Virus record (IMG/VR): IMGVR_UViG_3300042386_001233
Span: 62,001-126,000 of that record
DNA: 64,000 bases
Strand: one strand, 5' to 3'
A model generated the notes under the pieces. It was given only the letters and a program-made list of their open reading frames with translations. It was not told where the DNA came from and searched no databases. The position numbers and the translations under genes were made by a program. Of the stretch, positions 28,894 through 64,000 are shown one piece after another (the stretch's first letter is position 1; each line of letters starts with the position of its first letter).

Positions 28894-28900
28894 ATACACC
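28894..28900 (-). promoter_or_regulatory. GGTGTAT motif upstream of the phoH-replication operon
   Basis: GGTGTATTATTAATGCATAAT in the intergenic gap. Confidence 0.6.
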
Positions 28901-28915
28901 ATTGTTAATTTAATA

Positions 28916-29341
28916 TTATTTACCGCTAGAACCGAAGCCACCGTTAGATCTTGAGGTTTCTCCTAAGCTATTGGTCTCTTGAAATGTAACAGAATGATAG
29001 GTTTCAAAAATAATTTGTGCTATCCTATCACCACGTGAGATTTTGAACATATTGTTTTGGTCTGTATTGTACAAAACCACCCCTATTTCTCCTCTATAGC
29101 CGGGATCTATAACTCCAGCCAAGACATCTATACCATTTTTAAATGCTAGTCCAGACCGTGGTGCTATGCGACCATAGATGCCACTGGGCATGGATAGGGA
29201 GATACCTGTGCGAACTAGTTTTCTGGTTAATGGGAAAATAACCATATCTTCTACAGAATACAGGTCAGCACCAGCGTCATCAATATTAGCTCTTGATGGT
29301 GCTTTAGCTAACTCGTTTAGTTTTACAAAATCAATATTCAT
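28916..29341 (-). CDS. dut: Trimeric dUTPase
   Basis: AGADL, RIAPRSG, GVIDPGYRGE, GDRIAQ, RSNGGFGSSG. Confidence 0.97.
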   Translation of the reverse strand: MNIDFVKLNELAKAPSRANIDDAGADLYSVEDMVIFPLTRKLVRTGISLSMPSGIYGRIAPRSGLAFKNGIDVLAGVIDPGYRGEIGVVLYNTDQNNMFKISRGDRIAQIIFETYHSVTFQETNSLGETSRSNGGFGSSGK

Positions 29342-29343
29342 AC

Positions 29344-31536
29344 TTATAGTAGACATGCTCCACCAGCACAGCTGATTTCTTCTATTCCTGCTGTATTGTC
29401 TTCTAGTTCTGATAATTGAGTGTAGTCAACCTTGGTAAACCCATTGAATAGATCACAATAGATCTTCCAATTATATACATCTTTCATGCAATATGTTAAA
29501 CGACGTAAATCAGAATCGAAGTATTTACTAGCAAAATTTGTCATTTTTGTCACAAACTTTAGCTTATTTGGATCGTCTGTTTCTTTAGTCTGATTTAGGC
29601 TGACATAATCACATGCTGCCCACAGATTATTATTAAAGGCATTCAAGCCTAATTCAATTAATCCAGAGCACCACAAGGCAGCATCTCCATATTCCTTTAC
29701 TATTTCTCTGCTAGTATAAACAGTAGTAAAAGGAGCCTGTGGATAATCTTTATCTCCACTTTGTGGTATCAATGATATGCCAGCAAAATATTTTCTATTA
29801 TCATAGATAAATCTAGCAACACTTTCCCATTCATCCGGCTTAACTGTTACTGTATTGCTAACGTTATGACTAAGATAGTCTTGTGTACATAGCGATCTAT
29901 TCTTTCCAGAATATACCCAATTTTTTTGAGTATCTTTAACAACCTTTAGCATCTCTACTGCCGGTAATTGATTCTTTAACTTTGCACCATCGGGTACCTC
30001 AATAGGAAACTTAATAACCTCATCAGTATTGTTAGCAGACCATGATGACTTTTCACATGCCTGTGGGTTTAGTTTCTTAAAGTATTGATACGGTGCTTCT
30101 AAGACATTCGCTTGAACGTGCCTAATATATCTTTTAGCATGGTGCGGGTGTATTCCGGAGCTAGTACCAAGCATACTGCTGCTCGTTCCTTCTGGCTTTA
30201 AACAGGTTACTCTAGCTGCTTGATTAATACCTATAGCTTTAGCCATTAGCTTGTTTGTTTCAACAGCGATCTTTGCTCCGTTCTTTAATGCTTTTTCTGT
30301 TAGCACCAAATCATGTTTTTCCATAGTTCCTGTTAATGAGACTCCCAACAAAGCTTCTCTCTCAAATATCTTACAACTAATTTCTCCAAGATAATCTAGC
30401 TTTGTAAATCCTGCTTGTAAAGTACCAATGATAGCTGCTGCTTTACATCTCTCATAAAAATCTTCTTCATCTTCTATTGATGAGCAGTTAATTGTGGAGA
30501 GATTACATCCTTGCCATCCACTCTTTCCGCTTTCTTCATCCACTGGCCACATACCGACTTCAACGCAAGGATTAAATGTCATTTCTGTAGAATCACTCCA
30601 AATAAATCCTGGCTCTCCGAATTCTTTCACAGACTGCATTAAAGCGTCGAACTCTTCGTATGTTGTTGAATCTTTTATTAGAAGTGCTGAGTTATTGCTT
30701 CTTGCTCTTTGTGGATTGTCCATATACCAATTGCCCGTTTTAGCTTTAGCCATTTCTATATCGTCATGACTGAATAAAGCCAAAGAAGCACTTCGTCGAA
30801 CACCACCAGATAAAACCGCGTCACTACTATGCATGATAATATCATAAGCATCAATTGGTCTAAGTTTCTTTTGACCATTATAGATACATCTATCTAGCAA
30901 AGTTCTGATTTTTTCTAGTCCGTTGGCTAGGGGTTCGTATCCAGGAGCTTTGCCTACTCCGGATGCTAATGATGATCCTTTTGGTCTAATATTGGAATAA
31001 TCAAACACTATGTGACTATTCTTATATTGTTTGAATTCTTCTACTGGCTTACTAAAGTAGGAACTTAGTAATACTCCAAGAGAATTTGCCCAGCCTTCGA
31101 TACTATCTTCAATTACGTATTTTACTGCTTGATCTTCTTTAACATCATGTTCTAGTGACGGTAGCTTGGATACATGATGCTTTTGAACACTGAATCCAGT
31201 ACCGGATCCACAGAGCAGTAACCAAAAACATTCTTGAAAAAATCTTAAGCGATCACAGTATGAACTTGTGCAATTATAGATTTTCGCATGTCTCTTTAGG
31301 ATAGGGTCTCCTCCAAACTGTAGTGCTCTTTGTGATCCAAGCACTTTTCTTTTTAGCATTAGTTCATATGCCCAGTCGATGTCGTTTGTAATGCCCTTGT
31401 CAGCATAAAAGGAATGCATCATATTCTTAACACGATCTACTGCTTCTTTCCATGTTTCTCTGCGATTTTTATCTTCAATCCAACGAGCATATTTGCTAAC
31501 GAAAGTATAGTTCTGTAATTCTTGCAGAGCTGACAT
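29344..31536 (-). CDS. nrdJ: Ribonucleotide reductase, class II (AdoCbl-dependent, RTPR-like)
   Basis: YNC, GGVRRSA, NPCVE, CNL, KPEGTSS and C-terminal CAGGAC; no beta-subunit gene adjacent. Confidence 0.8.
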   Translation of the reverse strand: MSALQELQNYTFVSKYARWIEDKNRRETWKEAVDRVKNMMHSFYADKGITNDIDWAYELMLKRKVLGSQRALQFGGDPILKRHAKIYNCTSSYCDRLRFFQECFWLLLCGSGTGFSVQKHHVSKLPSLEHDVKEDQAVKYVIEDSIEGWANSLGVLLSSYFSKPVEEFKQYKNSHIVFDYSNIRPKGSSLASGVGKAPGYEPLANGLEKIRTLLDRCIYNGQKKLRPIDAYDIIMHSSDAVLSGGVRRSASLALFSHDDIEMAKAKTGNWYMDNPQRARSNNSALLIKDSTTYEEFDALMQSVKEFGEPGFIWSDSTEMTFNPCVEVGMWPVDEESGKSGWQGCNLSTINCSSIEDEEDFYERCKAAAIIGTLQAGFTKLDYLGEISCKIFEREALLGVSLTGTMEKHDLVLTEKALKNGAKIAVETNKLMAKAIGINQAARVTCLKPEGTSSSMLGTSSGIHPHHAKRYIRHVQANVLEAPYQYFKKLNPQACEKSSWSANNTDEVIKFPIEVPDGAKLKNQLPAVEMLKVVKDTQKNWVYSGKNRSLCTQDYLSHNVSNTVTVKPDEWESVARFIYDNRKYFAGISLIPQSGDKDYPQAPFTTVYTSREIVKEYGDAALWCSGLIELGLNAFNNNLWAACDYVSLNQTKETDDPNKLKFVTKMTNFASKYFDSDLRRLTYCMKDVYNWKIYCDLFNGFTKVDYTQLSELEDNTAGIEEISCAGGACLL

Positions 31537-31676
31537 TATGATCTCCTAGTGTTTAGAATCGCCGCTAATCCGATTATAACAGCGGCATGAAAAGAATAAT
31601 TTATAGTGTCAATATTTGTATTAAAAAATCGTTGATACATATATACGACTGTTGAAATGTAAAATGCTATAGACAT
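31536..31676 (-). CDS. Small 46-aa membrane protein (not in the ORF track)
   Basis: MSIAFYISTVVYMYQRFFNTNIDTINYSFHAAVIIGLAAILNTRRS fills the gap exactly; stop overlaps the nrdJ ATG (TAATG). Confidence 0.5.
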   Translation of the reverse strand: MSIAFYISTVVYMYQRFFNTNIDTINYSFHAAVIIGLAAILNTRRS

Positions 31677-31678
31677 GA

Positions 31679-32143
31679 TTATACACCGTTAATATTTTTA
31701 ATCCAAGATAAATCTGGTCTTATCCTAACTATCTTAATGCCGCTCATTTGTACGAATAAATCAAATCTTTTTTTTGCATCTTCATCAAATAAGTGAGTAC
31801 CATGATCATCGGACATTACCACAGAAGTAACACCTTCTTGCCATAAAGCCATAATACAATCATTACAACTTTGACCAGTTACGTACGCTATACCATTATC
31901 TGGCCTAACAACACAATTACTTAAAGCATTTCGTTCTGCATGAATCATCCACGGATATTTTTCTGGGCGAGTCTTTGGAAGGTCATCATCATCTAATCCT
32001 CGGGGGTAACCATTGTAGCCCACGCCAAGAATTCTATTATTCTGATCTGTGATTACGCATCCGTGTTGGGTGTGAATATCATGACTTCTTTGAGACACCA
32101 CCTTTGACAAACCTAAAAAATAATCGGTCCAGATCGGTCTCAT
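31679..32143 (-). CDS. dCMP deaminase
   Basis: RSHD, GYNG, HAERNAL, SCNDC. Confidence 0.9.
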   Translation of the reverse strand: MRPIWTDYFLGLSKVVSQRSHDIHTQHGCVITDQNNRILGVGYNGYPRGLDDDDLPKTRPEKYPWMIHAERNALSNCVVRPDNGIAYVTGQSCNDCIMALWQEGVTSVVMSDDHGTHLFDEDAKKRFDLFVQMSGIKIVRIRPDLSWIKNINGV

Positions 32144-36618: not shown

Positions 36619-37449
36619 CTATACTTCCTTGTAGTTTTTAATCACACCGTTACAGAAATCATTTAAATGCGTATTTATATCAAGAACTTTAGAGCCTCCG
36701 CCATAATGAACCCAATAAAAATCTTCCGGTGCGGAGTTTGGGTCATGTGGATTTTTCAAATAAAATAGGAGAGAAGAGTCAATACCTTTAACTATCAGAT
36801 TACTATTTTTGGATGGAAGATATTCGGTCTTTATTAGTTTTGATAATGCAAAAGCCAATAATTCATCATATGAATTCCTATCCATTTGCTTTTCGTAGTT
36901 AATTAGCGATTGAGATTTTAGAGCATATACTACTCCCAAACACCATTTTTTTTGTTTTTCAACAGACCATTCTATAAGTTCTTCAATAGTAAAACCCCAA
37001 ACTTTGTAAAAGTCATTTGGATCCCATTGTTTTGTGCTTTTTATAATTTTTTCTTTAGCATCGAAGGAGCCACCGTCTCCGACCAACATTTCCGATTCTC
37101 CCAACATATCTTTTACAGCTGAGTTAAAATCAACTTTGCCAAACAAATACATGTCGGAATCAACCCAGCAAATAATTTCTTCTGGATGTTCTTTTGCAAC
37201 TTCAATGCACTTCGTAAATTTTTGCAAGTTTGAACTTGTTCTCCAAACTTTTACTCCTATATTATTCAAAAAATCCAAGTATTTAGATTCTTGTATATCT
37301 GATATTACATAGATATCTTGTGGAAGCAGCCCGCCATTTTTAATCAGTGAAACAGCGTGGGCCGCCGCAAACATCGGATAACGATATTGTCTTTCAAAGG
37401 GCGGTTCTTGGATCCACCCGGTCCATCTTGCAATCATCACTATTTTCAT
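36619..37449 (-). CDS. GT-A glycosyltransferase
   Basis: WVDSD (DxD), DE and VHY motifs. Confidence 0.55.
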   Translation of the reverse strand: MKIVMIARWTGWIQEPPFERQYRYPMFAAAHAVSLIKNGGLLPQDIYVISDIQESKYLDFLNNIGVKVWRTSSNLQKFTKCIEVAKEHPEEIICWVDSDMYLFGKVDFNSAVKDMLGESEMLVGDGGSFDAKEKIIKSTKQWDPNDFYKVWGFTIEELIEWSVEKQKKWCLGVVYALKSQSLINYEKQMDRNSYDELLAFALSKLIKTEYLPSKNSNLIVKGIDSSLLFYLKNPHDPNSAPEDFYWVHYGGGSKVLDINTHLNDFCNGVIKNYKEV

Positions 37450-37458: not shown

Positions 37459-37572
37459 TTAATTAAACCTATCAATTAGCCATTTTTCAGACCTACTATT
37501 ACTTGAGGGACCAATTAAATTACACCTAACTAAACTCTTTTTTCCAGCACATATCTGTGTATTAGTTCTCAT
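37459..37572 (-). pseudogene. 37-aa scar-like mini-ORF
   Basis: MRTNTQICAGKKSLVRCNLIGPSSNSRSEKWLIDRFN; fills the gap and overlaps the upstream gene end. Confidence 0.35.
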
Positions 37573-55134: not shown

Positions 55135-55172
55135 AGAAATAATCTCTGTAGAAAGGAAGGATTATAGTATAA

Positions 55173-55210
55173 ATACACCAATTATAATTTAGTTTGTTTT
55201 TTAGGTGTAT
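55173..55210. promoter_or_regulatory. Back-to-back divergent GGTGTAT motifs
   Basis: Minus strand GGTGTATTTATACTATAAT (55179); plus strand GGTGTATCCTTTATTATGAT (55204). Confidence 0.65.
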
Positions 55211-55281: not shown

Positions 55282-55452
55282 ATGACATATGATAATGATG
55301 GACCGATTTATAGTGTTTTGAATGGGAAACCGTGTTATTGCTGCAATTCGTGGGGGACCTGCGACAATTTTGGAGAGGCTATGTGTGCCAATATTGATGG
55401 CATATGCTACGGCGACTTCGAAACTTGTTGGGCCAATTTAGGAGATTGCTAA
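55282..55452 (+). CDS. 56-aa 8-Cys peptide
   Basis: MTYDNDGPIYSVLNGKPCYCCNSWGTCDNFGEAMCANIDGICYGDFETCWANLGDC; has its own upstream motif. Confidence 0.6.
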   Translation: MTYDNDGPIYSVLNGKPCYCCNSWGTCDNFGEAMCANIDGICYGDFETCWANLGDC

Positions 55453-55487
55453 AATCTATCCTGGATATAATCTTTGATTATGTCGTA

Positions 55488-55530
55488 GATAAATCCGCCC
55501 CATAGTATTATTACTCCTGTGGCGGTCAGT
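55488..55530. terminator. Hairpin between convergent genes
   Basis: CCGCC...GGCGG stem with inner AGTA/TACT pairing. Confidence 0.4.
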
Positions 55531-55534
55531 TTTC

Positions 55535-56458
55535 TTATAGATAATCTTCGAATCCGTAGCTCGGTAGTTTTTGTAAAGGAAAGCCATCAAAACCACTAAA
55601 AGCATAAGAGCCATTAGCAGATAGCATTCCAGCAGCAACATCAGCGTGGATTAAAAACGACCCTTCTGGAATAGGACCCCATTCTGGATGTCCACCATCA
55701 TTCCATTTACCCCAGCTATTTTGAACGAGAAAAGCTGGTTCACTACCAGTATCATCACAAGCTATCCAGGCCATACAATGACCCCAGTTACCAGATGTTC
55801 TAGCAAATCCCTTTTTATCTCTAGTATTGCTAAATCCATAATTAGAGCATACAGCTAATCCATAACCATTAGCTAAAGCATCACGGGCTTCTTCTACTGT
55901 TCGTATTAATGAAGCAGTCTTGATCTGGTGATCGTTAGAGAGATCTAGTACTTTATCTGGAAGACCTCTACCGCCCCAGCCCGCCCCTAAATTACCATTA
56001 TATTTACTGAAATCTACAAAACCATAATTCTTTCTCACTACAAGACCACCAACCTTACTAACAAATTCAGCTGCTCTAGCACAACTCATACCCTGTCCAC
56101 TAAACCCTCTATATCCATAGATAGCTTCTGTTGCACCCCTTGCTATCCAATCCTCTCTCTCATTATGTATATCTATTTCTACAGCTCGGGTTACATCACA
56201 AGCATTTCGCGTTCCGTGACTAACACAATCTCCAGTAGTTTGTCTTTCATTATAAGGATGTTTATCAAACTTTAACACACTTTTGTATGGTGTTGAAAGC
56301 TTACCTTTGCCACTACCACTAATTTTTTTACTAGCATCTCCAAATAATGGATACTTGGAAGTTTCCATTAAGTGATCAAACACATGCTGTTCAAATAAAC
56401 AACCGCTAAAACCCTTACGATAATTGTCATATAATTCTTTTGGAGTATATCGTGGCAT
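55535..56458 (-). CDS. Papain-fold (C1-like) cysteine peptidase
   Basis: QTTGDCVSHG, WGHCM, QNSWG (Q/C/H/N catalytic set). Confidence 0.85.
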   Translation of the reverse strand: MPRYTPKELYDNYRKGFSGCLFEQHVFDHLMETSKYPLFGDASKKISGSGKGKLSTPYKSVLKFDKHPYNERQTTGDCVSHGTRNACDVTRAVEIDIHNEREDWIARGATEAIYGYRGFSGQGMSCARAAEFVSKVGGLVVRKNYGFVDFSKYNGNLGAGWGGRGLPDKVLDLSNDHQIKTASLIRTVEEARDALANGYGLAVCSNYGFSNTRDKKGFARTSGNWGHCMAWIACDDTGSEPAFLVQNSWGKWNDGGHPEWGPIPEGSFLIHADVAAGMLSANGSYAFSGFDGFPLQKLPSYGFEDYL

Positions 56459-56949
56459 TATTTTGATCCCATGTTACAAGCCCAAGCTAAAGCATTAAGA
56501 CCTTCTGCAGCTTTAACTCGTAGCTCTTTGGATAGTAGAATATGATCATCGCCTATAGCTGCAACAACAACTTCTTTAGCTTCTTTTGCTAAATCTGGAT
56601 ATTTGCCTTTTATGTCTAGTTTAAGCATCACACCAGCTAAGCTATTTGCTTGACGAATTTCTTCAGTACTCTTAACTACTTCGTCTTCTCCATCAAGCTC
56701 CACAAGCTTTGCCAAATCAATGTAAAGATCTCTAAGTCTTTTAGCATCGTTTTTAGCCCCTGCTTCTTTTAGAAGAACAACAACATCATCTGCTTCTTTT
56801 TTGACGGCTGGGTCTGTTGGTTCTGGTAGCTCTAAAACATCAACTACTGCTGGTTTGTTTGGACCAAGAATATTTGAAAAGTCTGGCTTAAGCAAACCAA
56901 CAACAATTAATAGACCAGCTAATACTAGTAGTACGTTTTTTTGATTCAT
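56458..56949 (-). CDS. N-terminally membrane-anchored helical protein
   Basis: Signal-anchor VLLVLAGLLIVVGLL. Confidence 0.6.
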   Translation of the reverse strand: MNQKNVLLVLAGLLIVVGLLKPDFSNILGPNKPAVVDVLELPEPTDPAVKKEADDVVVLLKEAGAKNDAKRLRDLYIDLAKLVELDGEDEVVKSTEEIRQANSLAGVMLKLDIKGKYPDLAKEAKEVVVAAIGDDHILLSKELRVKAAEGLNALAWACNMGSK

Positions 56950-57338
56950 GATACCTTATCCTCATTTTGTTTACTGCATACATTGGGACTTAAATATGGG
57001 AACATCTGGTCTGCTACCTTAACAGCTTCAGAACATCCGCTCTGAACAGCAAGATCACGAGTTTGCTTCCATGAAACTACTAGCTTAAAAAATGTATCTT
57101 CTGAATCTGTTTTCTTTGGAACAACAACAGGAGAAACAGCAGGAACATTTACTACTGGGAGAGAAGTATTGTCTGTTGCTCCTCTGAGTTTTTCAATCAT
57201 AGAACCTAATAGCTTTTGTACTGGATTAAGCTTATCCTTAAACATAACCCATAGTACGATACCAACACCAGCATATAGAGCCAAGTCCATTGTGCTCAAT
57301 CTACTACTAAACTCTTGGAAACTTTCTGTAAAATTCAT
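56946..57338 (-). CDS. Membrane protein
   Basis: TM segment LALYAGVGIVLWVMF. Confidence 0.6.
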   Translation of the reverse strand: MNFTESFQEFSSRLSTMDLALYAGVGIVLWVMFKDKLNPVQKLLGSMIEKLRGATDNTSLPVVNVPAVSPVVVPKKTDSEDTFFKLVVSWKQTRDLAVQSGCSEAVKVADQMFPYLSPNVCSKQNEDKVS

Positions 57339-57349
57339 TTTAGCCTCTC

Positions 57350-57775
57350 TTATTTATCTGAAACTGATGGAGTTTTATCTACGTCCGGAGTAATTACAAC
57401 ACTTGGATCAATGAAAATGCCATTATTCCTAAAAGTAATGACAAAAGCATCAATTGAAGAACTTACTAAAAGCATTAACAATTGCTTGACATACTTCTGT
57501 ATAATAGGCTGTAAAAGTTTTGGCACAAATGGAAAATTCACTAAAGTAAAAACTTGATCATAAAAGTTGCTAATCATAGTCATAGCAAGTGTTTTTTTAT
57601 CAACCCCTTTAAGAGAGGGGTTATTATCTTCTATCTTTTGAATTACTTCGGCTGTAGCCAATTGCAATACGTTCCATGCTTGTGGCATTGCTACTGCTTT
57701 GGCGTTTTTAAGTATTTCTTTAGCTTTAGCTACTAAATTTCCAAGATCATTTACTGGCAGGTTTTGGTTTTCCAT
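57350..57775 (-). CDS. Hypothetical protein (holin-associated type)
   Basis: G.DKK.LA motif, amphipathic helices. Confidence 0.45.
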   Translation of the reverse strand: MENQNLPVNDLGNLVAKAKEILKNAKAVAMPQAWNVLQLATAEVIQKIEDNNPSLKGVDKKTLAMTMISNFYDQVFTLVNFPFVPKLLQPIIQKYVKQLLMLLVSSSIDAFVITFRNNGIFIDPSVVITPDVDKTPSVSDK

Positions 57776-58079
57776 TTGTTTTTCTCTTTTTTCTTACTGT
57801 TGCTGGTTTGTCGTTCTTTTTGTTTGCTTCTTTTCTTTCTTCTGGAGTGGCTGTACTCCACCAAGTCTTTTTTAGGTCTGTTCTTCCTTTTACATATTTA
57901 AATAATACAGTTAGCTGTCCAATAATAAGGATTGTTGCTTCTAGACCTCTTGTAGTTTCTTGAATTAGGTCTTCTTTTTGAGAATTTTCACCTATAAGAC
58001 CCATAAGATATAATCCGCTAAAAATAAAACTAACTACTGTAAACCAAAATTCTGAACTTTTCCAACCGGGCTTAATCAT
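57747..58079 (-). CDS. Putative holin
   Basis: KPGWKSSEFW, two TM segments, basic C-tail. Confidence 0.55.
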   Translation of the reverse strand: MIKPGWKSSEFWFTVVSFIFSGLYLMGLIGENSQKEDLIQETTRGLEATILIIGQLTVLFKYVKGRTDLKKTWWSTATPEERKEANKKNDKPATVRKKRKTNGKPKPASK

Positions 58080-58121
58080 AATAGTTTATCTCCTATGTTA
58101 AAGACTGCTATTATATACTAT

Positions 58122-58128
58122 ATACACC
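58122..58128 (-). promoter_or_regulatory. GGTGTAT motif upstream of the holin/peptidase operon
   Basis: GGTGTATATAGTATATAAT followed by an AGGAG RBS. Confidence 0.65.
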
Positions 58129-58129
58129 G

Positions 58130-58825
58130 CTACAAGATCTTATCTGATTTAGCAATATTCAAATCCCACCACAATGGCTGCATATTAGTATAGTGAAAAC
58201 AAATTTTTTGCTGTTCTGGATCAGAAAGGTCAAAACTGGCGCATGGAATTATGTGGTCAATATGCCATCCTTTGGGGCCATAGGCTTCCCAGTTCAGTCT
58301 AGGATCTTTATAAAATTGTGATTCCAGATGTTGTTTAAACTCTTCAATAGAACAACCCAATAATTCTGTTGTAGCTTGAGATTTATAGTATCCTTTAATA
58401 CTAGCTACTATTCTTTTTTGTAAAATACTTTTTAACCTATAAGAAAGATCAGAATAATATTTTTTATGCTGCCACTTATTTGCACTTTGTCTAATTTTTT
58501 CTTTATTATTAATCCTATAATTTTTCATATACTCGGGCTTATTTAGTCTTTGTTCTTTCTGATAAGCTAGCTTAGTTTCTCGTTGTCTTGAATATCTTTG
58601 TTTATCTATTGTTTTATTATGCTCTTTATTTTTAATTTTATAGTCTTTAGATTTTTTTATTCTATCTTCTCTATTTTTAATATATCTATTGTGCTGATTA
58701 GCCTTATCACAACTTTTACACTGAGCTAGTTTGCCATATTTACCAGTTTTACTATTCGGAAAATCATTAAGTTGTTTTGTAATATTACATTGATTACATG
58801 TTTTGGTTTGAGTCATAATAAACAC
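58130..58825 (-). CDS. HNH homing-type endonuclease
   Basis: KTCNQC..CKSC; LLGCSIEEFKQHLESQF; WHIDHIIPCASF..CFHYTNMQPLW..N..K. Confidence 0.85.
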   Translation of the reverse strand: MFIMTQTKTCNQCNITKQLNDFPNSKTGKYGKLAQCKSCDKANQHNRYIKNREDRIKKSKDYKIKNKEHNKTIDKQRYSRQRETKLAYQKEQRLNKPEYMKNYRINNKEKIRQSANKWQHKKYYSDLSYRLKSILQKRIVASIKGYYKSQATTELLGCSIEEFKQHLESQFYKDPRLNWEAYGPKGWHIDHIIPCASFDLSDPEQQKICFHYTNMQPLWWDLNIAKSDKIL

Positions 58826-58834
58826 GGTTTAGTA

Positions 58835-59707
58835 TTATGCGTTTTGATCAACAAATCCGAAACAAACCGTACAATAATTTTCACTAACAGTATAATTGAA
58901 AGTTACAGTAGTTACAGTTCCATCTATTCGAATTATATTATATCCTTCTTCTCCGGTAAACTGAGAATATTGTGTAGCATTTACTGGATTTTGATATGTT
59001 GTAAGTGTTTCCCATATTGGAGTAAATGATGCTGATACTTGTACAGGAACTGGGGTACCTCCTTGACCAACGCTAGCAAATGCAACCAACGCGTCGGTAA
59101 CAGGTTGACTAAAAGTTGCAGTAAAAATACCAGATTGAGTATTCTTAATTTGAGTTCCACTAAGTGGTACTCCGTAAGCTTCGGGGAAGGTTGTGCCACC
59201 AACCATACCATCGTGGGCATCCATACCTCCGCCAGTTTGTGTTATTGAGATTGTGATATTGTTTTGACCAATTCCAGAAGCGGAGGTTGAAGTAACAGAG
59301 CTGATATTCATCCACTGAAACCCAGAACTACCAAAACTACAAAACTTCTCACCAGAATAAGGAGCTGGCCAGTTTACTAACCAAGGATAGCTTGCATAAC
59401 TATATGCTCTCGTAATCTCCCCTTCTGCTCCAATATAAAGCCATACTCCTGTCTCGTATCGGACAGTTTCGTCTCCATAGGTATAGGTCTCACGACCATA
59501 AGGAGCATATCCAATAGGAGCAAGAGTTCTGTCACCAGAAACCCATCCTATCATTTTGACACTAGCAACTGAATCTGTACAACTTTCTGATGTACTTCCA
59601 AATACTAGATTCTCGCCAAGGAATATTTTAGAAACACTATTATCTCCTAATTTAATAGAAGTTATGTTAGAGTTACTTAAAAATATATCACTATTTACTG
59701 TTGGCAT
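58835..59707 (-). CDS. Virion/tail-fibre-associated mosaic protein
   Basis: N-terminal IKLGDNSVSKIFLGENLVF module plus beta-rich domains. Confidence 0.5.
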   Translation of the reverse strand: MPTVNSDIFLSNSNITSIKLGDNSVSKIFLGENLVFGSTSESCTDSVASVKMIGWVSGDRTLAPIGYAPYGRETYTYGDETVRYETGVWLYIGAEGEITRAYSYASYPWLVNWPAPYSGEKFCSFGSSGFQWMNISSVTSTSASGIGQNNITISITQTGGGMDAHDGMVGGTTFPEAYGVPLSGTQIKNTQSGIFTATFSQPVTDALVAFASVGQGGTPVPVQVSASFTPIWETLTTYQNPVNATQYSQFTGEEGYNIIRIDGTVTTVTFNYTVSENYCTVCFGFVDQNA

Positions 59708-59719
59708 ACAAATTTATCC

Positions 59720-59980
59720 TTAGCCATTAACTATGTATAGTGTATTAGTATCTTTTGTAGCAAGAGCATCGTAGTTGCTTTGAGAAATACTAATCATATT
59801 TGTTATACGAATAGAATTATTAACTAAGCTAGTATTGCTTTGAACTAAACCAGAATGAAGAACAGATACTGGGACTTTTTTTGTTAAAGCAGACCCTGAT
59901 GGATCGTCCATAATTAAAAATATATCATCACTAGTCAGAGCACTAGCTGCTGGAAATTCATTAATACGTTGTATACTCAT
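59720..59980 (-). CDS. Small tail-fibre-associated protein
   Basis: RINEFP..DDIFLIMD..TKKV and SQSNYDALATKDTNTLYIV motifs. Confidence 0.6.
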   Translation of the reverse strand: MSIQRINEFPAASALTSDDIFLIMDDPSGSALTKKVPVSVLHSGLVQSNTSLVNNSIRITNMISISQSNYDALATKDTNTLYIVNG

Positions 59981-60193
59981 TTAACCACCTATTACTGTTT
60001 GGTCGCCGACTAATTGAACAAAAATACCATTATAGAATCTATTATCATATTTTGTTTCAATATCACTAATTGTTGGAGTGTTTTTAACATACGTGTCGAT
60101 TGTTGAGTATTCTCCGGTAACTGTTGTTGTAACAACGGTTGTTCCGTTTTTTATTTGATTAGCACTAATTGCTTTATTTATATCGTTTGCCAT
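59981..60193 (-). CDS. Hypothetical small protein
   Basis: 70-aa ORF packed in the operon. Confidence 0.55.
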   Translation of the reverse strand: MANDINKAISANQIKNGTTVVTTTVTGEYSTIDTYVKNTPTISDIETKYDNRFYNGIFVQLVGDQTVIGG

Positions 60194-60196
60194 AAA

Positions 60197-60514
60197 TTAC
60201 CTTTCTATTCTGTCTTCTAAAGTTTCTAAAGTTTTGCCAAGCATTGCTATTTGAATTTTCAGTTCTGTCATAACTTCTGTATTTCTTTGAAGAGCCAGCG
60301 CGAAAGCTGCTTGACTTTCTTTGTTAGAAGCTAACCTTTCCATAATAAATTGTTTATCATGAAGGTATGGAGATTGTGTTTCTATCATAACCAAAACCTC
60401 TGATTTAGTTGCCATATTTCTACCAATAGCCACCCAAAATCCAACCATTGTTACTATAATTCCAATACTTGTTGTGGCTATGTTCTCCCAGAAATGAATA
60501 ATGGTTTCAGACAT
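60197..60514 (-). CDS. TM + coiled-coil protein
   Basis: TM segment IGIIVTMVGFWV; C-terminal heptads. Confidence 0.6.
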   Translation of the reverse strand: MSETIIHFWENIATTSIGIIVTMVGFWVAIGRNMATKSEVLVMIETQSPYLHDKQFIMERLASNKESQAAFALALQRNTEVMTELKIQIAMLGKTLETLEDRIER

Positions 60515-60563
60515 TATGGAAGCCTTTTATAAGATTTTTAGAAAGTGTTATTCTTTAGATATA

Positions 60564-60570
60564 ATACACC
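60564..60570 (-). promoter_or_regulatory. GGTGTAT motif
   Basis: GGTGTATTATATCTAAAGAAT immediately after a terminator. Confidence 0.6.
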
Positions 60571-60573
60571 TAT

Positions 60574-60608
60574 AAAAAAAGAACCAGAAAGATGATTCCT
60601 GGTTCTCT
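60574..60608 (-). terminator. Rho-independent terminator
   Basis: Minus strand AGAACCAGGAA-TCATC-TTTCTGGTTCT followed by a T-run. Confidence 0.75.
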
Positions 60609-60634
60609 TCTTATTGGTAGAATTTAATTAACTA

Positions 60635-61177
60635 TTAGCCATTTTTAGCTGGATAGTTTTTTGCAATAGCAACAGGAGCGCCACTCTTGAATCTCATAGA
60701 ACCGGGAACGCTTCTGGTGGGACTAGCAGCATTATCTGTACCTGGGGTTTCTGTAACAGCTGTTGGGGCAGTTGTGAACCTACCTGTGTAAAGACTAAAG
60801 TAGCCAGCTCTGATAGCGGTTGCGGTGCCGGGTGATCTGTAGCTTTCTCTCTTGTTAATGCTTCTTAATTGACCAGGAACATTAGCTGTAGTTGATAAAG
60901 CACTACTGGCAACTCCACCAAGCTCTGAGGTTACTTTGGCAGTTATGGGCTTGACATGATCGTGGGCGATAGTTCCTTCAGAAATAGCCTTGTTTGTGTA
61001 ATCTCCATCAATAACTGTTGAAGCGAAAACACCAACATTTACTTGTCCTAGTGAACTATTCTCTAAGACAGAGGATACTGTGCCGACTCTTTTAGCTGTA
61101 CCGTGATTATTATTTGTAGAGCTACCACTCCAGTATGTGCCTGTTGAGGCTGCTCCACCTTGTTGAATTGTAGCCAT
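60635..61177 (-). CDS. Ala/Thr/Ser/Gly-rich probable virion protein, monocistronic
   Basis: Low-complexity composition; GGAG RBS; own motif and terminator. Confidence 0.55.
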   Translation of the reverse strand: MATIQQGGAASTGTYWSGSSTNNNHGTAKRVGTVSSVLENSSLGQVNVGVFASTVIDGDYTNKAISEGTIAHDHVKPITAKVTSELGGVASSALSTTANVPGQLRSINKRESYRSPGTATAIRAGYFSLYTGRFTTAPTAVTETPGTDNAASPTRSVPGSMRFKSGAPVAIAKNYPAKNG

Positions 61178-61233
61178 TTTATAAAACTCCATGAAGATTT
61201 AAGGAAAGAAACAAGTATATACTTATTATTCGT

Positions 61234-61240
61234 ATACACC
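61234..61240 (-). promoter_or_regulatory. GGTGTAT motif
   Basis: GGTGTATACGAATAATAAG in the intergenic gap. Confidence 0.6.
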
Positions 61241-61253
61241 TAAAAACAGAGAA

Positions 61254-61895
61254 TTAGCTATTTATTAGCTGTAAACCGTTTAGGGAATTGATTCTTAAAC
61301 CGTATAATTGGTTATTTTTAACCATTTTTAGATGATTACTATTCCACAAATTACCATTACAGATAATATTGATATTTGGAACTTTCTTATTAATTAGAGC
61401 AGAAGCTATGATATTGTCGCCAATATCGTCTAAAGAGTATCCAGTTGAGGGATAGATTGTTTTAACATTAAAGTCATATAAGATTTGGGCAACTTTATAG
61501 AGCAGCTCGTAGGAGTATTGCCTATATTCTAAAACGTATCTTAGTTCAACATTTAGGGAAGAACATAGATTAGTTAATTGTTTAATGTCATCCCTAAACT
61601 TATCATACTTCCTGTTGCACAATAGCTGTGCTGGGCAAACTGCCTCAATTATATCAACATTATTTTTTAAACAAAAATCAACTACTGATAGTCTGGATTT
61701 TATATCTAACACACCCATTGGATAATCTATCGGGCAAGAAATCTTTGCAGCATTGTTTACTAAAGACTTTACAAGTCTGGCATATGGCGGAAGTACAGAT
61801 ATTGTCTGCACATTGTGTTTTAAAGCTTCTGTTAAGTTGCCTTGAATTTCGGCATCATTAGAAGCGATATCATAATATGAATATTCTAATAGCAT
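61254..61895 (-). CDS. DeoC (deoxyribose-phosphate aldolase)-like protein lacking catalytic lysines
   Basis: PIDYPMG, RYVLE, TIYPSTG (vs FIKTSTG), IICNGN (vs VKASGG). Confidence 0.7.
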   Translation of the reverse strand: MLLEYSYYDIASNDAEIQGNLTEALKHNVQTISVLPPYARLVKSLVNNAAKISCPIDYPMGVLDIKSRLSVVDFCLKNNVDIIEAVCPAQLLCNRKYDKFRDDIKQLTNLCSSLNVELRYVLEYRQYSYELLYKVAQILYDFNVKTIYPSTGYSLDDIGDNIIASALINKKVPNINIICNGNLWNSNHLKMVKNNQLYGLRINSLNGLQLINS

Positions 61896-62566
61896 TATTT
61901 TTTAAGTGAGTCTATATTGGGATATTTTTTAGTGCCAAGAATACCATCGGCAAAGCCGTAATATACTGCTTCTTCAGCCGTTAATATCCAATCGCATTTA
62001 TTAGCAAGTTGTGAGACTATGTGTTTTTTTGCCATCATTTTTTTCCAATTTTTCTCTTTAGCTATCATACTATTCATACACCTGTCAGTAAAAATATCAA
62101 CCATCTTATCACACTCGTTTTCGTTCCATCTAATGCCAGCCGCAGCAGCTTTGCTGTGTTCCCCATCCATACTAAATGACCCATAATGAATCATAACATG
62201 TGTATTTGGCATCAATATTCTAAGGTCGGCAGCTTGTAATAAAACACTACTAGAAGATTCTGCTTTAGCATAAGCGAGGATGATAACTTTAGCTTTTGAT
62301 GCCCTGACAGCATCATACATACCTAGGCAGTCTTGCCAGTCTCCTCCTGGTAAATGCATATGAACTAAAATTGGTTCTAGAGATAATAGGTTTAAGTACC
62401 TGAGATTTTTTTCAAGTACTATAGCAGACCTATAGTCAACACCACCTTCTTCACTATCTCCTAAATATGAATGTAGATATATTTCTCTGTTTTTTGTATC
62501 TATATTATATGAGTGTATTGATTGTAATTCGCTTTCAAGTTCAGTAAATGATTTGGCTGTTGACAT
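61895..62566 (-). CDS. clpP: ClpP-like serine protease
   Basis: REIYL, HLPGG, AESSS (Ser), VMIH (His), DWILTAEEAVYYGFAD (Asp). Confidence 0.85.
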   Translation of the reverse strand: MSTAKSFTELESELQSIHSYNIDTKNREIYLHSYLGDSEEGGVDYRSAIVLEKNLRYLNLLSLEPILVHMHLPGGDWQDCLGMYDAVRASKAKVIILAYAKAESSSSVLLQAADLRILMPNTHVMIHYGSFSMDGEHSKAAAAGIRWNENECDKMVDIFTDRCMNSMIAKEKNWKKMMAKKHIVSQLANKCDWILTAEEAVYYGFADGILGTKKYPNIDSLKK

Positions 62567-62568
62567 TG

Positions 62569-63000
62569 TTATGATAGCTCCGAGTATACTCTCTTATTTA
62601 TATCTCTCATTACCGAAGAATCATCAAAAGCTTTACCAACAGCAATTCGGAATCTGTATCTAGTAAAAATATCTAGGGTTTCAACCCCATCGGTTTTTTC
62701 GATAACATCAGCAACTTTATGAGTAATATCAAAGTTAGTATGCCCAATCCAAAAATTAAAAATCTTTCCACTCATAGTATTATCAGTGACTGGTATAATG
62801 CCCATTGGCGTAGCAATAACTTTTACTCTTTGTGTTGTATTAATTATTTTATTCTCTTGCTCCTCATCATTAATGTTTTCAGTAGTACCATCTGATTCTT
62901 GTTCTTCATAATCTGCAAGATATGGATCATGCTCCAGCTCTTCTGCGTCATCAGATCCAAATGGATCAAGCCACTTTTGCCATGAGATAAGATTGATCAT
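62569..63000 (-). CDS. Acidic hypothetical protein
   Basis: D/E-rich linker; C-terminal DGVE..RYRFRIAVGKAF domain. Confidence 0.6.
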   Translation of the reverse strand: MINLISWQKWLDPFGSDDAEELEHDPYLADYEEQESDGTTENINDEEQENKIINTTQRVKVIATPMGIIPVTDNTMSGKIFNFWIGHTNFDITHKVADVIEKTDGVETLDIFTRYRFRIAVGKAFDDSSVMRDINKRVYSELS

Positions 63001-63039
63001 ATAATTGATACTTTGTTTAAACTCTTATTTTTTTTAGAG

Positions 63040-63066
63040 ATACCATGTATAATACACCCATGGTAT
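63040..63066 (-). promoter_or_regulatory. GGTGTAT motif enclosed by an 8-bp inverted repeat
   Basis: ATACCATG-[TATAATACACC]-CATGGTAT. Confidence 0.6.
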
Positions 63067-63096
63067 AGTAATAAGAAATTGGCCGACAAACAACAG

Positions 63097-63513
63097 CTAT
63101 TTGGAGTTAAATACAGATCTTGGTCTGATTAGTGGGCCATTATCAATTAGTTTTTTCTCAAATTCGGTTTTTATAACATCATAATATGATAGAACATTAT
63201 CATAAAATAATTGCTCTTTATCATTATTCGTGTTTTTGATTTTATTACGAATTGTTGTCAATAATTTTGGTTCCATTAGATTATTAGTAACATAAATCAA
63301 CAATTCTGCAAATTTCTCTGCTTCTGTTGAAATTTCAACTAGAGATAATTTATCTAACTTTGGATGCAAAACTATGATATCAACCATGTCGTCTGGATGT
63401 AGAATTACACTTAGACTATGCATCTCCTCTGCTATAGACTCTTCTTGGGTTTTTTCTTTAGCCACAGAGGGCTGTTTTTTACTTAGCCAATAACGAAAGA
63501 GTTCTTGTAGCAT
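63097..63513 (-). CDS. Hypothetical protein
   Basis: 138 aa, ends PLIRPRSVF. Confidence 0.55.
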   Translation of the reverse strand: MLQELFRYWLSKKQPSVAKEKTQEESIAEEMHSLSVILHPDDMVDIIVLHPKLDKLSLVEISTEAEKFAELLIYVTNNLMEPKLLTTIRNKIKNTNNDKEQLFYDNVLSYYDVIKTEFEKKLIDNGPLIRPRSVFNSK

Positions 63514-63829
63514 TTGGTGGTAGTATATCGGTGTTAAGATCTATGGTTCTAGTATAGCTATTTATTATAGTAGTTTCATAATTAACAAAACAAATATAAT
63601 ATATATCAAGCTGAGAAGTTATGATAATGTCAACTAATTTAGGATTTGTTCCAGAGGTTTCTTTTATACATCTATTCAACAGCATTGATAGAAGCTCATT
63701 AATGTCTTGATTAGGCTCTAGTTCAACAGAAGGCAGTCTTAGAGTATAATCAGCTAATGAGAGTATCTCATATCTGTTCTTGGAATGAATAAAAATTGGA
63801 ATAATAAGATTAAGCTGTGCATTTATCAT
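63479..63829 (-). CDS. Hypothetical protein (possibly degenerate NUDIX fold)
   Basis: Likely start MINAQL overlapping the sigma-like gene end; YEILS..LRLPSVEL. Confidence 0.4.
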   Translation of the reverse strand: MINAQLNLIIPIFIHSKNRYEILSLADYTLRLPSVELEPNQDINELLSMLLNRCIKETSGTNPKLVDIIITSQLDIYYICFVNYETTIINSYTRTIDLNTDILPPNATRTLSLLAK

Positions 63830-64000
63830 AAGATCGAATAATATCCAGTGCTCTCTTAATGTTTTGCCTAATTGCTTCTCTAGAGACACCAAACTTTTTA
63901 CCAATATATGACAAAGTATGATTTTCTAGATAATACATTTTAATCTGTATTTTCTGTTTGTCAGATAAAATGCTATTATTCAGTAGCTGATCGATGCTTG
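63810..64000 (-). CDS. Sigma70 region-4-like C-terminus of a probable phage sigma factor (5'-truncated; not in the ORF track)
   Basis: Hand-translated ..LSDKQKIQIKMYYLENHTLSYIGKKFGVSREAIRQNIKRALDIIRS..*, a classic region 4.2 HTH. Confidence 0.8.
   Translation of the reverse strand, partial: SIDQLLNNSILSDKQKIQIKMYYLENHTLSYIGKKFGVSREAIRQNIKRALDIIRSYDKCTA

What the first reader, a model, noticed from the sequence alone, without database searches (positions are those of the whole stretch)
28894..64000. Candidate phage-specific promoter (GGTGTAT + AT-rich tail) paired with a phage sigma-factor-like gene at the window edge
Seen: GGTGTAT sits in intergenic gaps at 28894, 55173, 55204 (+ strand), 58122, 60564, 61234 and 63052, plus a copy at the dCMP-deaminase stop (31681). 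Each points toward the downstream gene and is followed by an AT-rich stretch, sometimes TATAAT/CATAAT. A 7-mer could occur a few times by chance in 64 kb (one copy at ~12843 is in coding sequence), but gaps are a very small part of this window. Also seen: an untracked ORF at 63810-64000 encodes a sigma70 region-4 HTH. Inference: a phage sigma factor or activator and its cognate promoter drive the replication, lysis, virion and ClpP operons, while host-type promoters drive ssb and the nucleotide genes.
Basis: partly seen in the sequence, partly recalled or inferred. Interest (0 to 1): 0.75.

Follow-up and report, generated by a model that had tools for sequence, protein, structure and literature searches.

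The report
Phage promoter motif GGTGTAT with phage sigma
A short DNA signal (GGTGTAT) sits in front of most middle and late gene blocks of this uncultured 244-kb lake phage and its distant relatives, and is most likely the start signal read by a phage-made sigma factor like the one already studied in coliphage phiEco32, so it is a real but not unprecedented kind of system.

Summary
The window has 13 copies against 5.7 expected; 12 lie on the gene strand and 6-7 fall in the 2.5% of bases that are intergenic (P about 4e-7). Unbiased counting makes GGTGTAT the most enriched upstream 7-mer in the whole 243.8-kb phage genome, in 28 relatives, and in several very distant phages with GC from 30 to 41%. 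It is one block: T-N-RGKGTAH, then about 9 G-free bases, with no -35 box. It lies a median 39 nt before start codons. It is always co-oriented with the gene, often just after a terminator, and is held or swapped for a working variant at orthologous sites.

The edge ORF is a complete 199-aa sigma with sigma2, a 3.2-like linker and sigma4. It is a remote full-length member of the phiEco32 gp36 family, whose proven promoter (AATGTATA) shares the TGTAT core.

The sigma-promoter pairing is inferred, not shown. The genome encodes a second sigma-like protein that nearly always co-occurs, and host sigma70 is not excluded. This is a new member of a known kind.

The parts
28894..28900 (-). GGTGTAT, intergenic. 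It lies 13-49 nt upstream of the PhoH-like gene (28113-28880), which heads a gap-poor - strand block running through RecA (24304-25326), DnaB (21538-23013) and the split PolIII alpha (16782-18650, 14281-15906).
31681..31687 (-). GGTGTATAAT overlapping the dCMP-deaminase stop codon. It lies directly upstream of a 46-aa ORF and the ribonucleotide reductase gene (29344-31536). It is a likely embedded promoter.
37520..37526 (-). GGTGTAA, a working variant of the motif. It is intergenic, 70 nt upstream of gene 36619-37449.
55173..55179 (-). GGTGTAT facing left in a divergent gap, 39 nt upstream of gene 54952-55134 and the block behind it.
55204..55210 (+). GGTGTAT facing right in the same divergent gap, upstream of the small + strand ORF 55240/55282-55452. 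With 55173 it forms back-to-back divergent promoters.
58122..58128 (-). GGTGTATATAGTATATAAT, intergenic, 42 nt upstream of gene 57747-58079.
60564..60570 (-). GGTGTAT, 49 nt upstream of gene 60197-60514. It lies immediately downstream of a terminator-like hairpin plus T-run (60574-60605). Relatives have AGTGTAT at this site.
61234..61240 (-). GGTGTAT, 41-56 nt upstream of the 185-aa gene 60635-61192. This is the only gene in the stretch laid (58000-63900) with lake metatranscriptome contigs. Distant relatives have GGGGTAT at the same place.
63052..63058 (-). GGTGTAT, 51 nt upstream of gene 62569-63000 and the ClpP-like protease gene 61895-62566. It is preceded by the clade-conserved element TTACTATA (63064-63071).
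63810..64000 (-). The 3' part (sigma4 helix-turn-helix) of the 199-aa sigma factor gene 'sigma-A'. The full gene is window 63810-64409, genome 125810-126409.
14257..14284 (-). Host-type promoter TTGACA-N17(TGc)-TATAAT in front of ssb (13842-14249). Listed as the contrast class.
62076..62082 (-). GGTGTAT inside the ClpP-like coding sequence (codons ..AGG TGT ATG..). Probably not a promoter. The same applies to 12843, 30147(+), 40229 and 45417.

Best explanation
GGTGTAT (more exactly T-N-R-G-K-G-T-A-H followed by about 9 G-free A/T-rich bases) is the single-block, -10-type core of the phage's own promoter class. It lies about 40 nt before the first start codon of middle and late operons. These include nucleotide metabolism, replication, the ClpP-like protease block, head genes and the giant tail/virion genes. 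Host core RNA polymerase reads it when loaded with a phage-encoded sigma.

The best candidate is the 199-aa sigma at the window edge (sigma-A). It has a sigma2 domain, a 3.2-like linker and a sigma4 domain, and is a remote full-length relative of phiEco32 gp36.

Proposed order of events:
1. Host sigma70 fires near-consensus TTGACA-N17-TAGAAT early promoters clustered at 159-216 kb. It also fires a conserved TTGACA-N17-TAAAAT promoter hidden inside the gene upstream of sigma-A.
2. Sigma-A accumulates.
3. Its sigma2 helix (Y72, R73, W79) holds the fork junction at the TGTA core, as gp36 does.
4. The A/T tract melts and transcription starts roughly 8-11 nt after the motif.

Shown: the motif's enrichment, orientation, spacing and deep conservation; the sigma's domain make-up; the host-type promoters. 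Inferred: that the motif is a promoter; which sigma reads it (sigma-A about 0.5); the register and the start site.
For: Motif as a promoter:
- It is the top upstream 7-mer genome-wide: 11 observed against 1.1 expected, P 2.5e-8.
- It is the top upstream 7-mer in 28 relatives: 51 against 3.85 expected.
- It lies almost only on the gene strand in relatives.
- 61 intergenic copies are co-oriented with a nearby downstream gene against 10 that are not. Only five variants share this behaviour: GGTGTAT, AGTGTAT, GGGGTAT, GGTGTAA and GGTGTAC.
- The logo is a single block with no -35.
- The distance to the start codon has a median of 39 nt and an IQR of 32-46.
- At orthologous gaps the motif is kept or swapped for a working variant while the flanks diverge.
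- At the portal gene's 3' end, ATG GTG TAT is kept in nearly all of about 22 relatives (two read GTG TAC) and Val is always GTG.
- Window copies form a divergent pair (55173/55204), and one copy follows a terminator.
- The generic sigma70 scan is not enriched here: 46 against 42.

Deep conservation: the motif is top or near-top in phages whose sigma-A-type protein (28-39% identical to the subgroup query) belongs to a distant branch of the family, at GC 30-41%. It is not top in two further contigs of GC 44-47%. This argues for a phage-borne reader.

Sigma-A:
- Sigma70_r4 scores 42 bits.
- The PDB profile aligns residues 92-193 to SigA regions 3.2-4.2.
- The AF2 model has pLDDT 80.5, and all top Foldseek hits are whole sigma factors.
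- It matches phrog_1740 over residues 37-194. gp36 is a phrog_1740 member at E 2e-45.
- hhalign places Y72/R73/W79 on gp36 Y83/R84/W90. Those residues stack on -12T and -11G in the gp36 open complex (PMC12276001).
- gp36 promoters read (t)AATGTATA(t/c) in the phiEco32 genome, sharing TGTAT(A).
- The family has 1348 cluster representatives, and most listed ones keep an ADW(R/K)(W/F)...YRNQCAIWAI-type signature.
- The host-type promoter inside the upstream gene is kept at synonymous sites in 21 relatives.
- In record G003 the other sigma's helix has diverged (W76K), sigma-A's helix is kept, and the motif is strongest.
Against: - No transcript 5' ends are available. The two lake metatranscriptomes gave only three short contigs, two of them (151 and 223 nt) inside gene 60635-61192.
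- A second sigma-like gene (sigma-B) has an equally invariant region 2 and a conserved host-type promoter. It co-occurs with sigma-A in every sufficiently complete distant record tested.
- In record G004 sigma-A's recognition helix has diverged but the motif persists.
- The similarity between sigma-A and gp36 is not significant on its own: hhalign E 0.008, probability 5%. gp36's base-reading residues E79, H80, S91, S94 and N95 are not conserved.
- Sigma-A keeps sigma70-like -35-reading residues (SREAIRQ), yet no -35 box accompanies the motif in this clade.
- In distant phages the element is GGTG+TATAAT, and in G008/G009 it sits at the right distance from TTGACT. Host sigma70 could therefore read it.
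- Early host-type promoters often carry the same RGTG-TA core.
Confidence: 0.55

Rival explanations
1. The motif is a phage promoter, but it is read by the second phage sigma-like protein, sigma-B (225 aa, genome 227096-227773, outside the window). Sigma-A then serves another, rarer promoter set or is a regulator.
For: - Sigma-B has a sigma2 domain (Pfam Sigma70_r2 at 22-24 bits; phrog_1740 over residues 22-93).
- It gives weak full-length sigma fold matches.
- Its region 2 is invariant across relatives, and it is better conserved than sigma-A in distant phages that keep the motif (E 1e-101 and 1e-87).
- It has a clade-conserved pure host-type promoter, so it is made early.
- It heads the terminase-portal-head block.
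- Its poorly defined sigma4 would suit a promoter without a -35.
- In G004 sigma-A's helix diverged while the motif stayed.
Against: - In G003 sigma-B's recognition helix is heavily diverged (the fork-junction Trp is lost), yet the motif is strongest there.
- GGTGTAT is the top 7-mer in G007, where only the sigma-A-type gene was found, but that record is 79% complete.
- Sigma-B matches the gp36 family over one domain only and lacks the Y-R pair.
- No third abundant motif was found that could serve as sigma-A's own target.
Confidence: 0.2
2. The motif is an unusual extended -10 promoter read by host sigma70: GGTG at -16 to -13 plus TAT... at -12. It may be helped by a phage factor that blocks -35 recognition, giving a T4 AsiA-type switch from -35-dependent early promoters to -35-independent ones. 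The phage sigmas would then do something else.
For: - In distant relatives the element is GGTG+TATAAT(A).
- In G008/G009 it lies 12 nt downstream of TTGACT, giving a 16-nt sigma70 spacer.
- The phage's own early promoters read TTGACA-N13-RGTG-TAGAAT, so they share GTGTA.
- The motif persists when either phage sigma's helix diverges.
Against: - In this clade the position that would be -7 is T in only 54% of sites, and -9 prefers T. That is poor for a -35-less sigma70 promoter.
- TG abuts the hexamer instead of the canonical TGn.
- The same GGTG is kept in phages of GC 30-47%, which presumably infect different hosts. A host-specific spacer preference does not explain this.
- phiEco32 promoters look similar (TGTATAT), yet gp36 is reported to read them (PMC12276001).
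Confidence: 0.15
3. The motif is not a promoter. It could be an operator for a phage DNA-binding regulator, or an RNA-level signal in 5' leaders such as a processing or stability site.
For: No 5'-end data exist. The position 30-45 nt before start codons would also fit a leader element.
Against: - There is no dyad symmetry and no conserved RNA pairing around it; the logo is a single asymmetric block.
- It occurs right after terminators and as a back-to-back divergent pair, where a new transcript must begin.
- It resembles a -10 element down to TATAAT in distant clades.
- Embedded copies at the 3' ends of upstream genes (portal, glycosyltransferase, dCMP deaminase) fit internal promoters.
Confidence: 0.07

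Closest known systems
Coliphage phiEco32 gp36 sigma and its middle/late promoters (AATGTA centred at -11.5; PMC12276001)
   Same: - The sigma is about 200 aa with a sigma2-like N-domain, a 3.2-like linker and a sigma4-like C-domain. Both proteins hit phrog_1740.
- The fork-junction residues Y-R-x5-W align.
- The promoter is one short block around -10 with a TGTAT(A) core and no reported -35 consensus.
- Early genes use host sigma70 promoters.
   Different: - The two bases upstream of TGTA are GG here and AA in phiEco32.
- gp36's base-contacting residues are not conserved.
- Sequence similarity is marginal (hhalign E 0.008).
- Sigma-A keeps a sigma70-like region 4.2.
- This phage is a 244-kb uncultured lake phage with a second sigma-like gene.
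- No gp79-like partner was looked for.
T4 late transcription (gp55 with gp33; promoter TATAAATA)
   Same: The promoter is a single -10-type block without a -35, read by a small diverged phage sigma on host core RNAP. It drives the virion genes.
   Different: Sigma-A has a clear sigma4 domain. No gp55, gp33 or clamp-coupling evidence was found. The motif also heads nucleotide and replication genes, so it is not late-only.
Extended -10 (TGnTATAAT) sigma70 promoters and the T4 AsiA-type early-to-middle switch
   Same: An upstream extension of the -10 hexamer replaces the -35. In distant relatives the hexamer is a perfect TATAAT.
   Different: TG abuts the hexamer, the extension is GGTG, and the 3' half of the hexamer is degenerate in this clade. 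No AsiA or MotA homologue was searched for or seen.
ECF (group 4) sigma factors
   Same: Two-domain sigma2 plus sigma4 architecture. Its own promoter carries the cognate core (AGGGTAA), which hints at autoregulation.
   Different: There is no bipartite AAC/CGT-type promoter and no adjacent anti-sigma was identified. Region 4.2 resembles primary sigmas.

Membership tests
sigma70-family sigma factor (the edge ORF, sigma-A) | sigma4 domain (regions 4.1-4.2 helix-turn-helix) | tested here: met
   Pfam Sigma70_r4 at E 5.9e-11, 42.2 bits against a cut-off of 24.1, over residues 148-192. A genome-level search agrees.
sigma70-family sigma factor (the edge ORF, sigma-A) | sigma2 domain (region 2: core binding and -10 recognition) | tested here: met
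   Pfam Sigma70_r2 is not detected. However, the AF2 model (pLDDT 80.5) aligns over its full length to SigA, SigH, sigmaS and ECF chains at probability 1.00. phrog_1740 covers residues 37-194. The family signature ADWRF...YSYRNQCAIWAI is shared with gp36's WRF...YR....IW.I.
sigma70-family sigma factor (the edge ORF, sigma-A) | region 3.2-like linker between the two domains | tested here: met
   The profile against PDB aligns residues 92-193 to SigA regions 3.2-4.2. The model is disordered at residues 91-108.
sigma70-family sigma factor (the edge ORF, sigma-A) | binds core RNA polymerase and directs initiation | not testable with these tools
   This needs biochemistry.
phiEco32 gp36-type phage sigma (phrog_1740) | profile membership over both domains | tested here: met
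   Sigma-A hits phrog_1740 at E 3.5e-7, residues 37-194 onto profile positions 79-215. gp36 hits at E 1.9e-45, residues 1-213 onto profile positions 28-229. The match is weak but in register.
phiEco32 gp36-type phage sigma (phrog_1740) | fork-junction residues Y83, R84 and W90 | tested here: met
   hhalign pairs them with Y72, R73 and W79, which are invariant in 38 homologues. The alignment itself is not statistically significant.
phiEco32 gp36-type phage sigma (phrog_1740) | base-reading residues E79, H80, S91, S94 and N95 | tested here: not met
   They align to T68, L69, A80, T83 and Y84. Specificity must therefore be achieved differently, which fits GG instead of AA upstream of TGTA.
phiEco32 gp36-type promoter | single conserved block with TGTA at -12 to -9 and no -35 consensus | tested here: inconclusive
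   The single block and the TGTAT core are shown. The register relative to the start site cannot be set without 5' ends.
extended -10 sigma70 promoter | TG at -15/-14, one free base, then a TAnnnT hexamer with strongly conserved -11A and -7T | tested here: not met
   TG abuts the hexamer. The would-be -7 position is T in 54% of 69 sites. In distant clades the hexamer is TATAAT, so the test is not met for this clade only.
bacterial/phage promoter (generic) | transcripts start at a fixed short distance downstream | not testable with these tools
   For RNA runs, none was listed on the first query. Two metatranscriptomes held only short contigs inside gene 60635-61192.

The most novel reading that the evidence does not exclude
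A large, uncultured clade of lake phages (about 110-244 kb, GC 30-47%) may share an ancient three-part transcription kit. The kit has one 7-nt core (RGKGTAH) and two co-inherited phage sigmas. The same core is also built into host-type early promoters (TTGACA-N13-RGTG-TAGAAT) and into sigma-A's own promoter. One DNA element would then be read first by host sigma70 (with a -35) and later by a phage sigma (without one). This would be a graded hand-over rather than separate promoter classes, with the two phage sigmas dividing or co-reading the same core.
Probability: 0.25. Interest if true: 0.65.

Novelty: new member of a known kind. Interest (0 to 1): 0.45.

Why it matters
The result gives a ready-made, testable promoter map for a 244-kb uncultured lake phage and its whole clade: 9 sites in the window and about 25 in the genome. 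No isolate has a terminase closer than 26% identity.

It links a very large uncharacterised family of about 200-aa metagenomic sigma factors (1348 cluster representatives) to the one structurally studied example, phiEco32 gp36. It also suggests that the TGTA(T) core is a family trait, with the two upstream bases setting specificity.

Practically, the motif improves operon and gene-start calls. It flags promoters embedded in coding sequence at the portal, glycosyltransferase and dCMP-deaminase 3' ends. It also offers a sigma/promoter pair that may act independently of host promoters and could be tested in vitro with E. coli core RNAP.

Tried and rejected
1. RNA evidence. The first run search listed no RNA run. 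The second found two lake metatranscriptomes, but they gave only three short contigs: two at 100% identity inside gene 60635-61192 and one partial 32-nt match (2 mismatches) near 59094-59125. They carry no 5'-end information.
2. Literature search for the motif string returned only primer hits. The original phiEco32 promoter paper is not held.
3. Near-identity and protein searches of isolated phages found no useful relative.
4. TACTATA/TTACTATA as a second, sigma-B-specific promoter class. It is common (116 copies) and not enriched in the genome. Its strong conservation is essentially confined to one orthologous gap, upstream of 62569-63000. It was kept only as a side note.
5. A sigma28-like reading of the early promoters (AAGTTT-N12/13-GCCGATAA). 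Only 3 strict matches exist. The general feature is a conserved CGATAA in the spacer.
6. Telling sigma-A from sigma-B by phyletic pattern. Both co-occur wherever records are complete enough. The records lacking sigma-B are 62-84% complete fragments.
7. Telling them apart by co-variation of recognition helix and motif. G003 favours sigma-A, G004 does not.
8. Contigs of distant sigma homologues fetched by exact-protein look-up were mostly too short to use.
9. The generic sigma70 promoter scan of 54000-64000 is at chance level.
10. My RBS-based start refinement created some false gaps, so enrichment was re-checked with the conservative long-ORF map.

Full report
WHAT THE WINDOW IS. The window is bases 62001-126000 of a single 243,821-bp virus record with direct terminal repeats, rated 100% complete, at GC 35.6%. 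The same sequence occurs at 100% word identity in 18 lake-water metagenome runs. No isolated phage is close: the large terminase is at most 26% identical to Bacillus siphophage terminases.

From about 6.0 kb to the right end, almost every gene in the window is on the - strand. The window carries the following genes:
- SSB, a split PolIII alpha, DnaB and RecA
- a PhoH-like protein, dUTPase, class-I-like ribonucleotide reductase and dCMP deaminase
- glycosyltransferases and endonuclease VII
- a ClpP-like protease
- many genes of unknown function

THE OBSERVATION. The total is 13 copies against 5.7 expected, with 12 on the gene strand. Six copies lie strictly within the 2.5% of bases that are intergenic (binomial P 4e-7). 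A seventh, 55173, is covered only by an antisense ORF that is probably spurious.

The copy at 31681 overlaps the dCMP-deaminase stop codon and lies 4 nt before the next ATG, ahead of the ribonucleotide reductase gene. The pair 55173(-)/55204(+) faces outwards in a divergent gap. The copy at 60564 follows a hairpin plus T-run.

UNBIASED TESTS. I called genes over the whole genome and counted all 7-mers in oriented upstream gaps.
- In the genome, GGTGTAT ranks first: 11 gaps against 1.1 expected, P 2.5e-8.
- The sigma protein retrieved 44 related IMG/VR loci at 59-100% identity. In these loci the motif occurs about five times per 20 kb on the gene strand and almost never on the other strand.
- In 28 non-redundant loci it is again the top upstream 7-mer: 51 against 3.85 expected.
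- A logo of 69 distinct intergenic sites shows one block only. T is favoured at position -2, then GGTGTAT, then about nine positions nearly free of G. No upstream box is present.
- Among all single-base variants, only GGTGTAT, AGTGTAT, GGGGTAT, GGTGTAA and GGTGTAC are found mostly in co-oriented gaps (22-43% of copies against 0-6% for the others). The core is therefore R-G-K-G-T-A-H, with G2, G4, T5 and A6 fixed.
- The motif ends a median 39 nt (IQR 32-46) before the start codon.

CONSERVATION AT ORTHOLOGOUS SITES. At orthologous gaps the motif is the conserved island. Upstream of the 185-aa gene, relatives have tttaGGTGTAT or tttGGGGTATA at the same spot. Upstream of the 105-aa gene they have GGTGTAT or AGTGTAT.

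Some copies are embedded in coding sequence:
- The last codons of the portal gene read ATG GTG TAT in nearly all of about 22 relatives (two read GTG TAC). Val is always GTG despite the A/T-rich codon usage. This site lies ahead of the head genes.
- In most relatives a copy sits in the last codons of a glycosyltransferase gene, ahead of the operon that ends with the sigma gene.

In the full genome the motif or its GGTGTAA variant also heads the giant virion-gene blocks (genome 2798, 7532, 40589) and the head block (235126, 238345). The motif therefore serves both middle-type and late-type genes.

DEEP CONSERVATION. A profile of the sigma family finds 1348 cluster representatives, nearly all about 200-220 aa and matching end to end. 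Most listed ones share the signature EDAIS.VA..IM.ADWRW ... YSYRNQCAIWAI and a sigma4 helix-turn-helix.

I fetched 25 IMG/VR loci for a distant subgroup whose sigma is 28-39% identical to the subgroup query. In six of about twenty groups GGTGTAT is again the first or near-first upstream 7-mer. It is also first in the whole contig G007; all of these have GC 30-41%. It is not top in whole-contig counts of G008 and G009 (GC 44-47%).

In these phages the element reads GGTG+TATAAT(A). In two contigs of GC 44-47% it lies 12 nt downstream of TTGACT, which is a full -35/-10 geometry.

THE SIGMA AT THE EDGE (sigma-A). The ORF continues beyond the window to 64409 and encodes 199 aa.
- Sigma70_r4 is clear.
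- A 38-sequence profile aligns residues 92-193 to regions 3.2-4.2 of primary sigmas.
- Pfam region 2 is not detected. However, the AlphaFold model (pLDDT 80.5) has an N-terminal helical domain, a disordered linker (residues 91-108) and a C-terminal helical domain. Its best PDB matches are all whole sigma factors.
- PHROG 1740, 'RNA polymerase sigma factor', covers residues 37-194.
- Region 4.2 reads SREAIRQ, close to the VTRERIRQ of primary sigmas. From general knowledge, that segment contacts TTGACA.

THE CLOSEST STUDIED SYSTEM. phiEco32 gp36 is a 214-aa sigma with the same three-part build. According to PMC12276001:
- middle and late promoters carry AATGTA centred at -11.5;
- W90 stacks on the -12T base pair, Y83 stacks on -11G, and R84 holds the -13 phosphate;
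- S91, S94 and N95 read -14 to -12;
- the C-domain touches the -35 region although no -35 consensus is known.

gp36 is a strong member of phrog_1740. A profile-sequence alignment of sigma-A to gp36 is weak (E 0.008, probability 5%). It nevertheless lines up DVA...WRF and places Y72, R73 and W79 on Y83, R84 and W90. gp36's base-reading residues are replaced. In the phiEco32 genome the promoter-like copies read (t)AATGTATA(t/c). The two systems therefore share TGTAT(A) and differ in the two bases upstream, GG here and AA there. This is the main reason to pair sigma-A with the motif.

HOW THE SIGMA IS MADE. A perfect TTGACA-N17-TAAAAT lies inside the gene upstream of sigma-A, about 260 nt before its start (window 64661-64689, outside the window). 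In 21 relatives Leu is always TTG there, Thr is ACA in all but one, and Gly is always GGT, while neighbouring synonymous sites vary. The promoter is therefore under selection. Its -16 to -10 stretch, AGGGTAA, fits the motif core, which hints at autoregulation.

Strong host-type promoters (TTGACA-N16-18-TAnnnT) cluster on the - strand at 159-216 kb, among small early-type genes. One also stands before ssb.

WHAT COMPLICATES THE PAIRING. The genome holds a second sigma-like gene, sigma-B, at genome 227096-227773 (225 aa).
- It has Sigma70_r2 at the cut-off, phrog_1740 over its N-domain, a Cys-rich insert and a C-terminal three-helix bundle. Its full-length fold matches to sigmas are weak.
- It follows a conserved small ORF and a clade-conserved host-type promoter. 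It heads the terminase-portal-head block.
- Its region 2 is as invariant as sigma-A's.
- It co-occurs with sigma-A in distant records G001-G004 and G006. It was not found in G007-G010, which are 62-84% complete fragments.
- Helix-against-motif comparison is split. In G003 sigma-B has lost its fork-junction Trp while sigma-A's helix and the motif are intact. In G004 the reverse holds for sigma-A.

Host sigma70 also cannot be dismissed. The early promoters often end their spacer with RGTG before TAGAAT, and the distant form is GGTG+TATAAT. Against this, in this clade the would-be -7 position is T in only 54% of sites, TG abuts the hexamer, and the GGTG extension is constant across phages that presumably infect different hosts.

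VERDICT. The motif is real and far beyond chance, and it has every sequence-level property of a promoter. I put promoter status at about 0.85 or higher. That a phage sigma reads it is likely. I estimate sigma-A at about 0.5, sigma-B at about 0.2, and host sigma70 with or without a cofactor at about 0.15.

The mechanism is of a known kind, a phage sigma with a single-block -10-type promoter as in phiEco32. It is found here in a large uncultured phage clade with its own core sequence and a second sigma.

Noticed in passing
outside the window: genome 227096-227773 (+) = L010:7096-7773: A second sigma-like gene (225 aa) with a sigma2 domain, a Cys-rich insert of CxxC type and a C-terminal helical bundle. 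It is preceded by a conserved small ORF and a clade-conserved TTGACA-N16/17-TAYTATAAT promoter. It is followed by a 'D5-like' regulator, GDP-mannose dehydratase, ERCC4 nuclease, terminase and portal genes.
   Followed up: yes
outside the window: genome about 168-216 kb, - strand (e.g. 198644, 204443, 209330): Early promoters are near-consensus TTGACA-N17-TAGAAT. They carry a conserved (G/C)CGATA(A/C) block inside the spacer, and often AAGTTT upstream. Three copies match the flagellar sigma28 pattern AAGTTT-N12/13-GCCGATAA. A conserved spacer in a sigma70 promoter is unusual and is unexplained.
   Followed up: partly
outside the window: genome 197.5-216.5 kb: About 15 copies of an inverted-repeat element: aagGACTTACG, a roughly 25-nt G+C-rich loop, then c/tTAAGTCctt. 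They lie between small early genes on both strands and could be terminators or a mobile/REP-like repeat.
   Followed up: no
outside the window: genome 193756-199910, - strand: Six copies of a roughly 45-nt repeat ending in ...GGATTTGG...(a/g)taGTCAGCGAg, upstream of small ORFs. Function unknown.
   Followed up: no
window 63064-63071 (-) and orthologous gaps in relatives: TTACTATA lies 5-15 nt upstream of the GGTGTAT/GGGGTAT site before gene 62569-63000. It is kept in nearly all relatives, including those that lack the GGTGTAT copy. It may be a second, host-type -10 of a tandem promoter.
   Followed up: partly
window 14281-18650 (-): DNA polymerase III alpha is split into two ORFs: PHP plus NTPase domains at 16782-18650, and finger/HhH/OB at 14281-15906. 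Two small ORFs lie between them (15909-16607 and 16600-16779), which suggests an inserted mobile element or a naturally split polymerase.
   Followed up: no
window 6-5684 (+) and genome 13704-33068: Giant virion-type ORFs. The window opens inside a 2660-aa gene (genome 59702-67684). A 6454-aa ORF lies further left.
   Followed up: no
window 60658-60955: In the stretch laid (58000-63900), the only full-identity lake-metatranscriptome contigs (two runs) fall inside the 185-aa Ala/Gly/Ser/Thr-rich gene 60635-61192; a third contig matches only 32 nt near 59094-59125. The gene is presumably very highly expressed and may encode a virion or decoration protein. No family hit was found.
   Followed up: partly
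window 63479-63904 (-) against 63097-63513 (-): Between the sigma gene and the next motif there are two overlapping ORFs in different frames and a 296-nt stretch with no confident gene. Some relatives have a single roughly 148-aa gene here. This could be a frameshift, two small genes or a non-coding stretch.
   Followed up: no
outside the window: genome 235126-235132 (+), and relatives L068-L138: A GGTGTAT copy is built into the last codons of the portal gene (M-V-Y). The Val codon is invariably GTG across about 22 relatives of 55-98% protein identity. This is an example of a promoter constrained inside coding sequence.
   Followed up: yes
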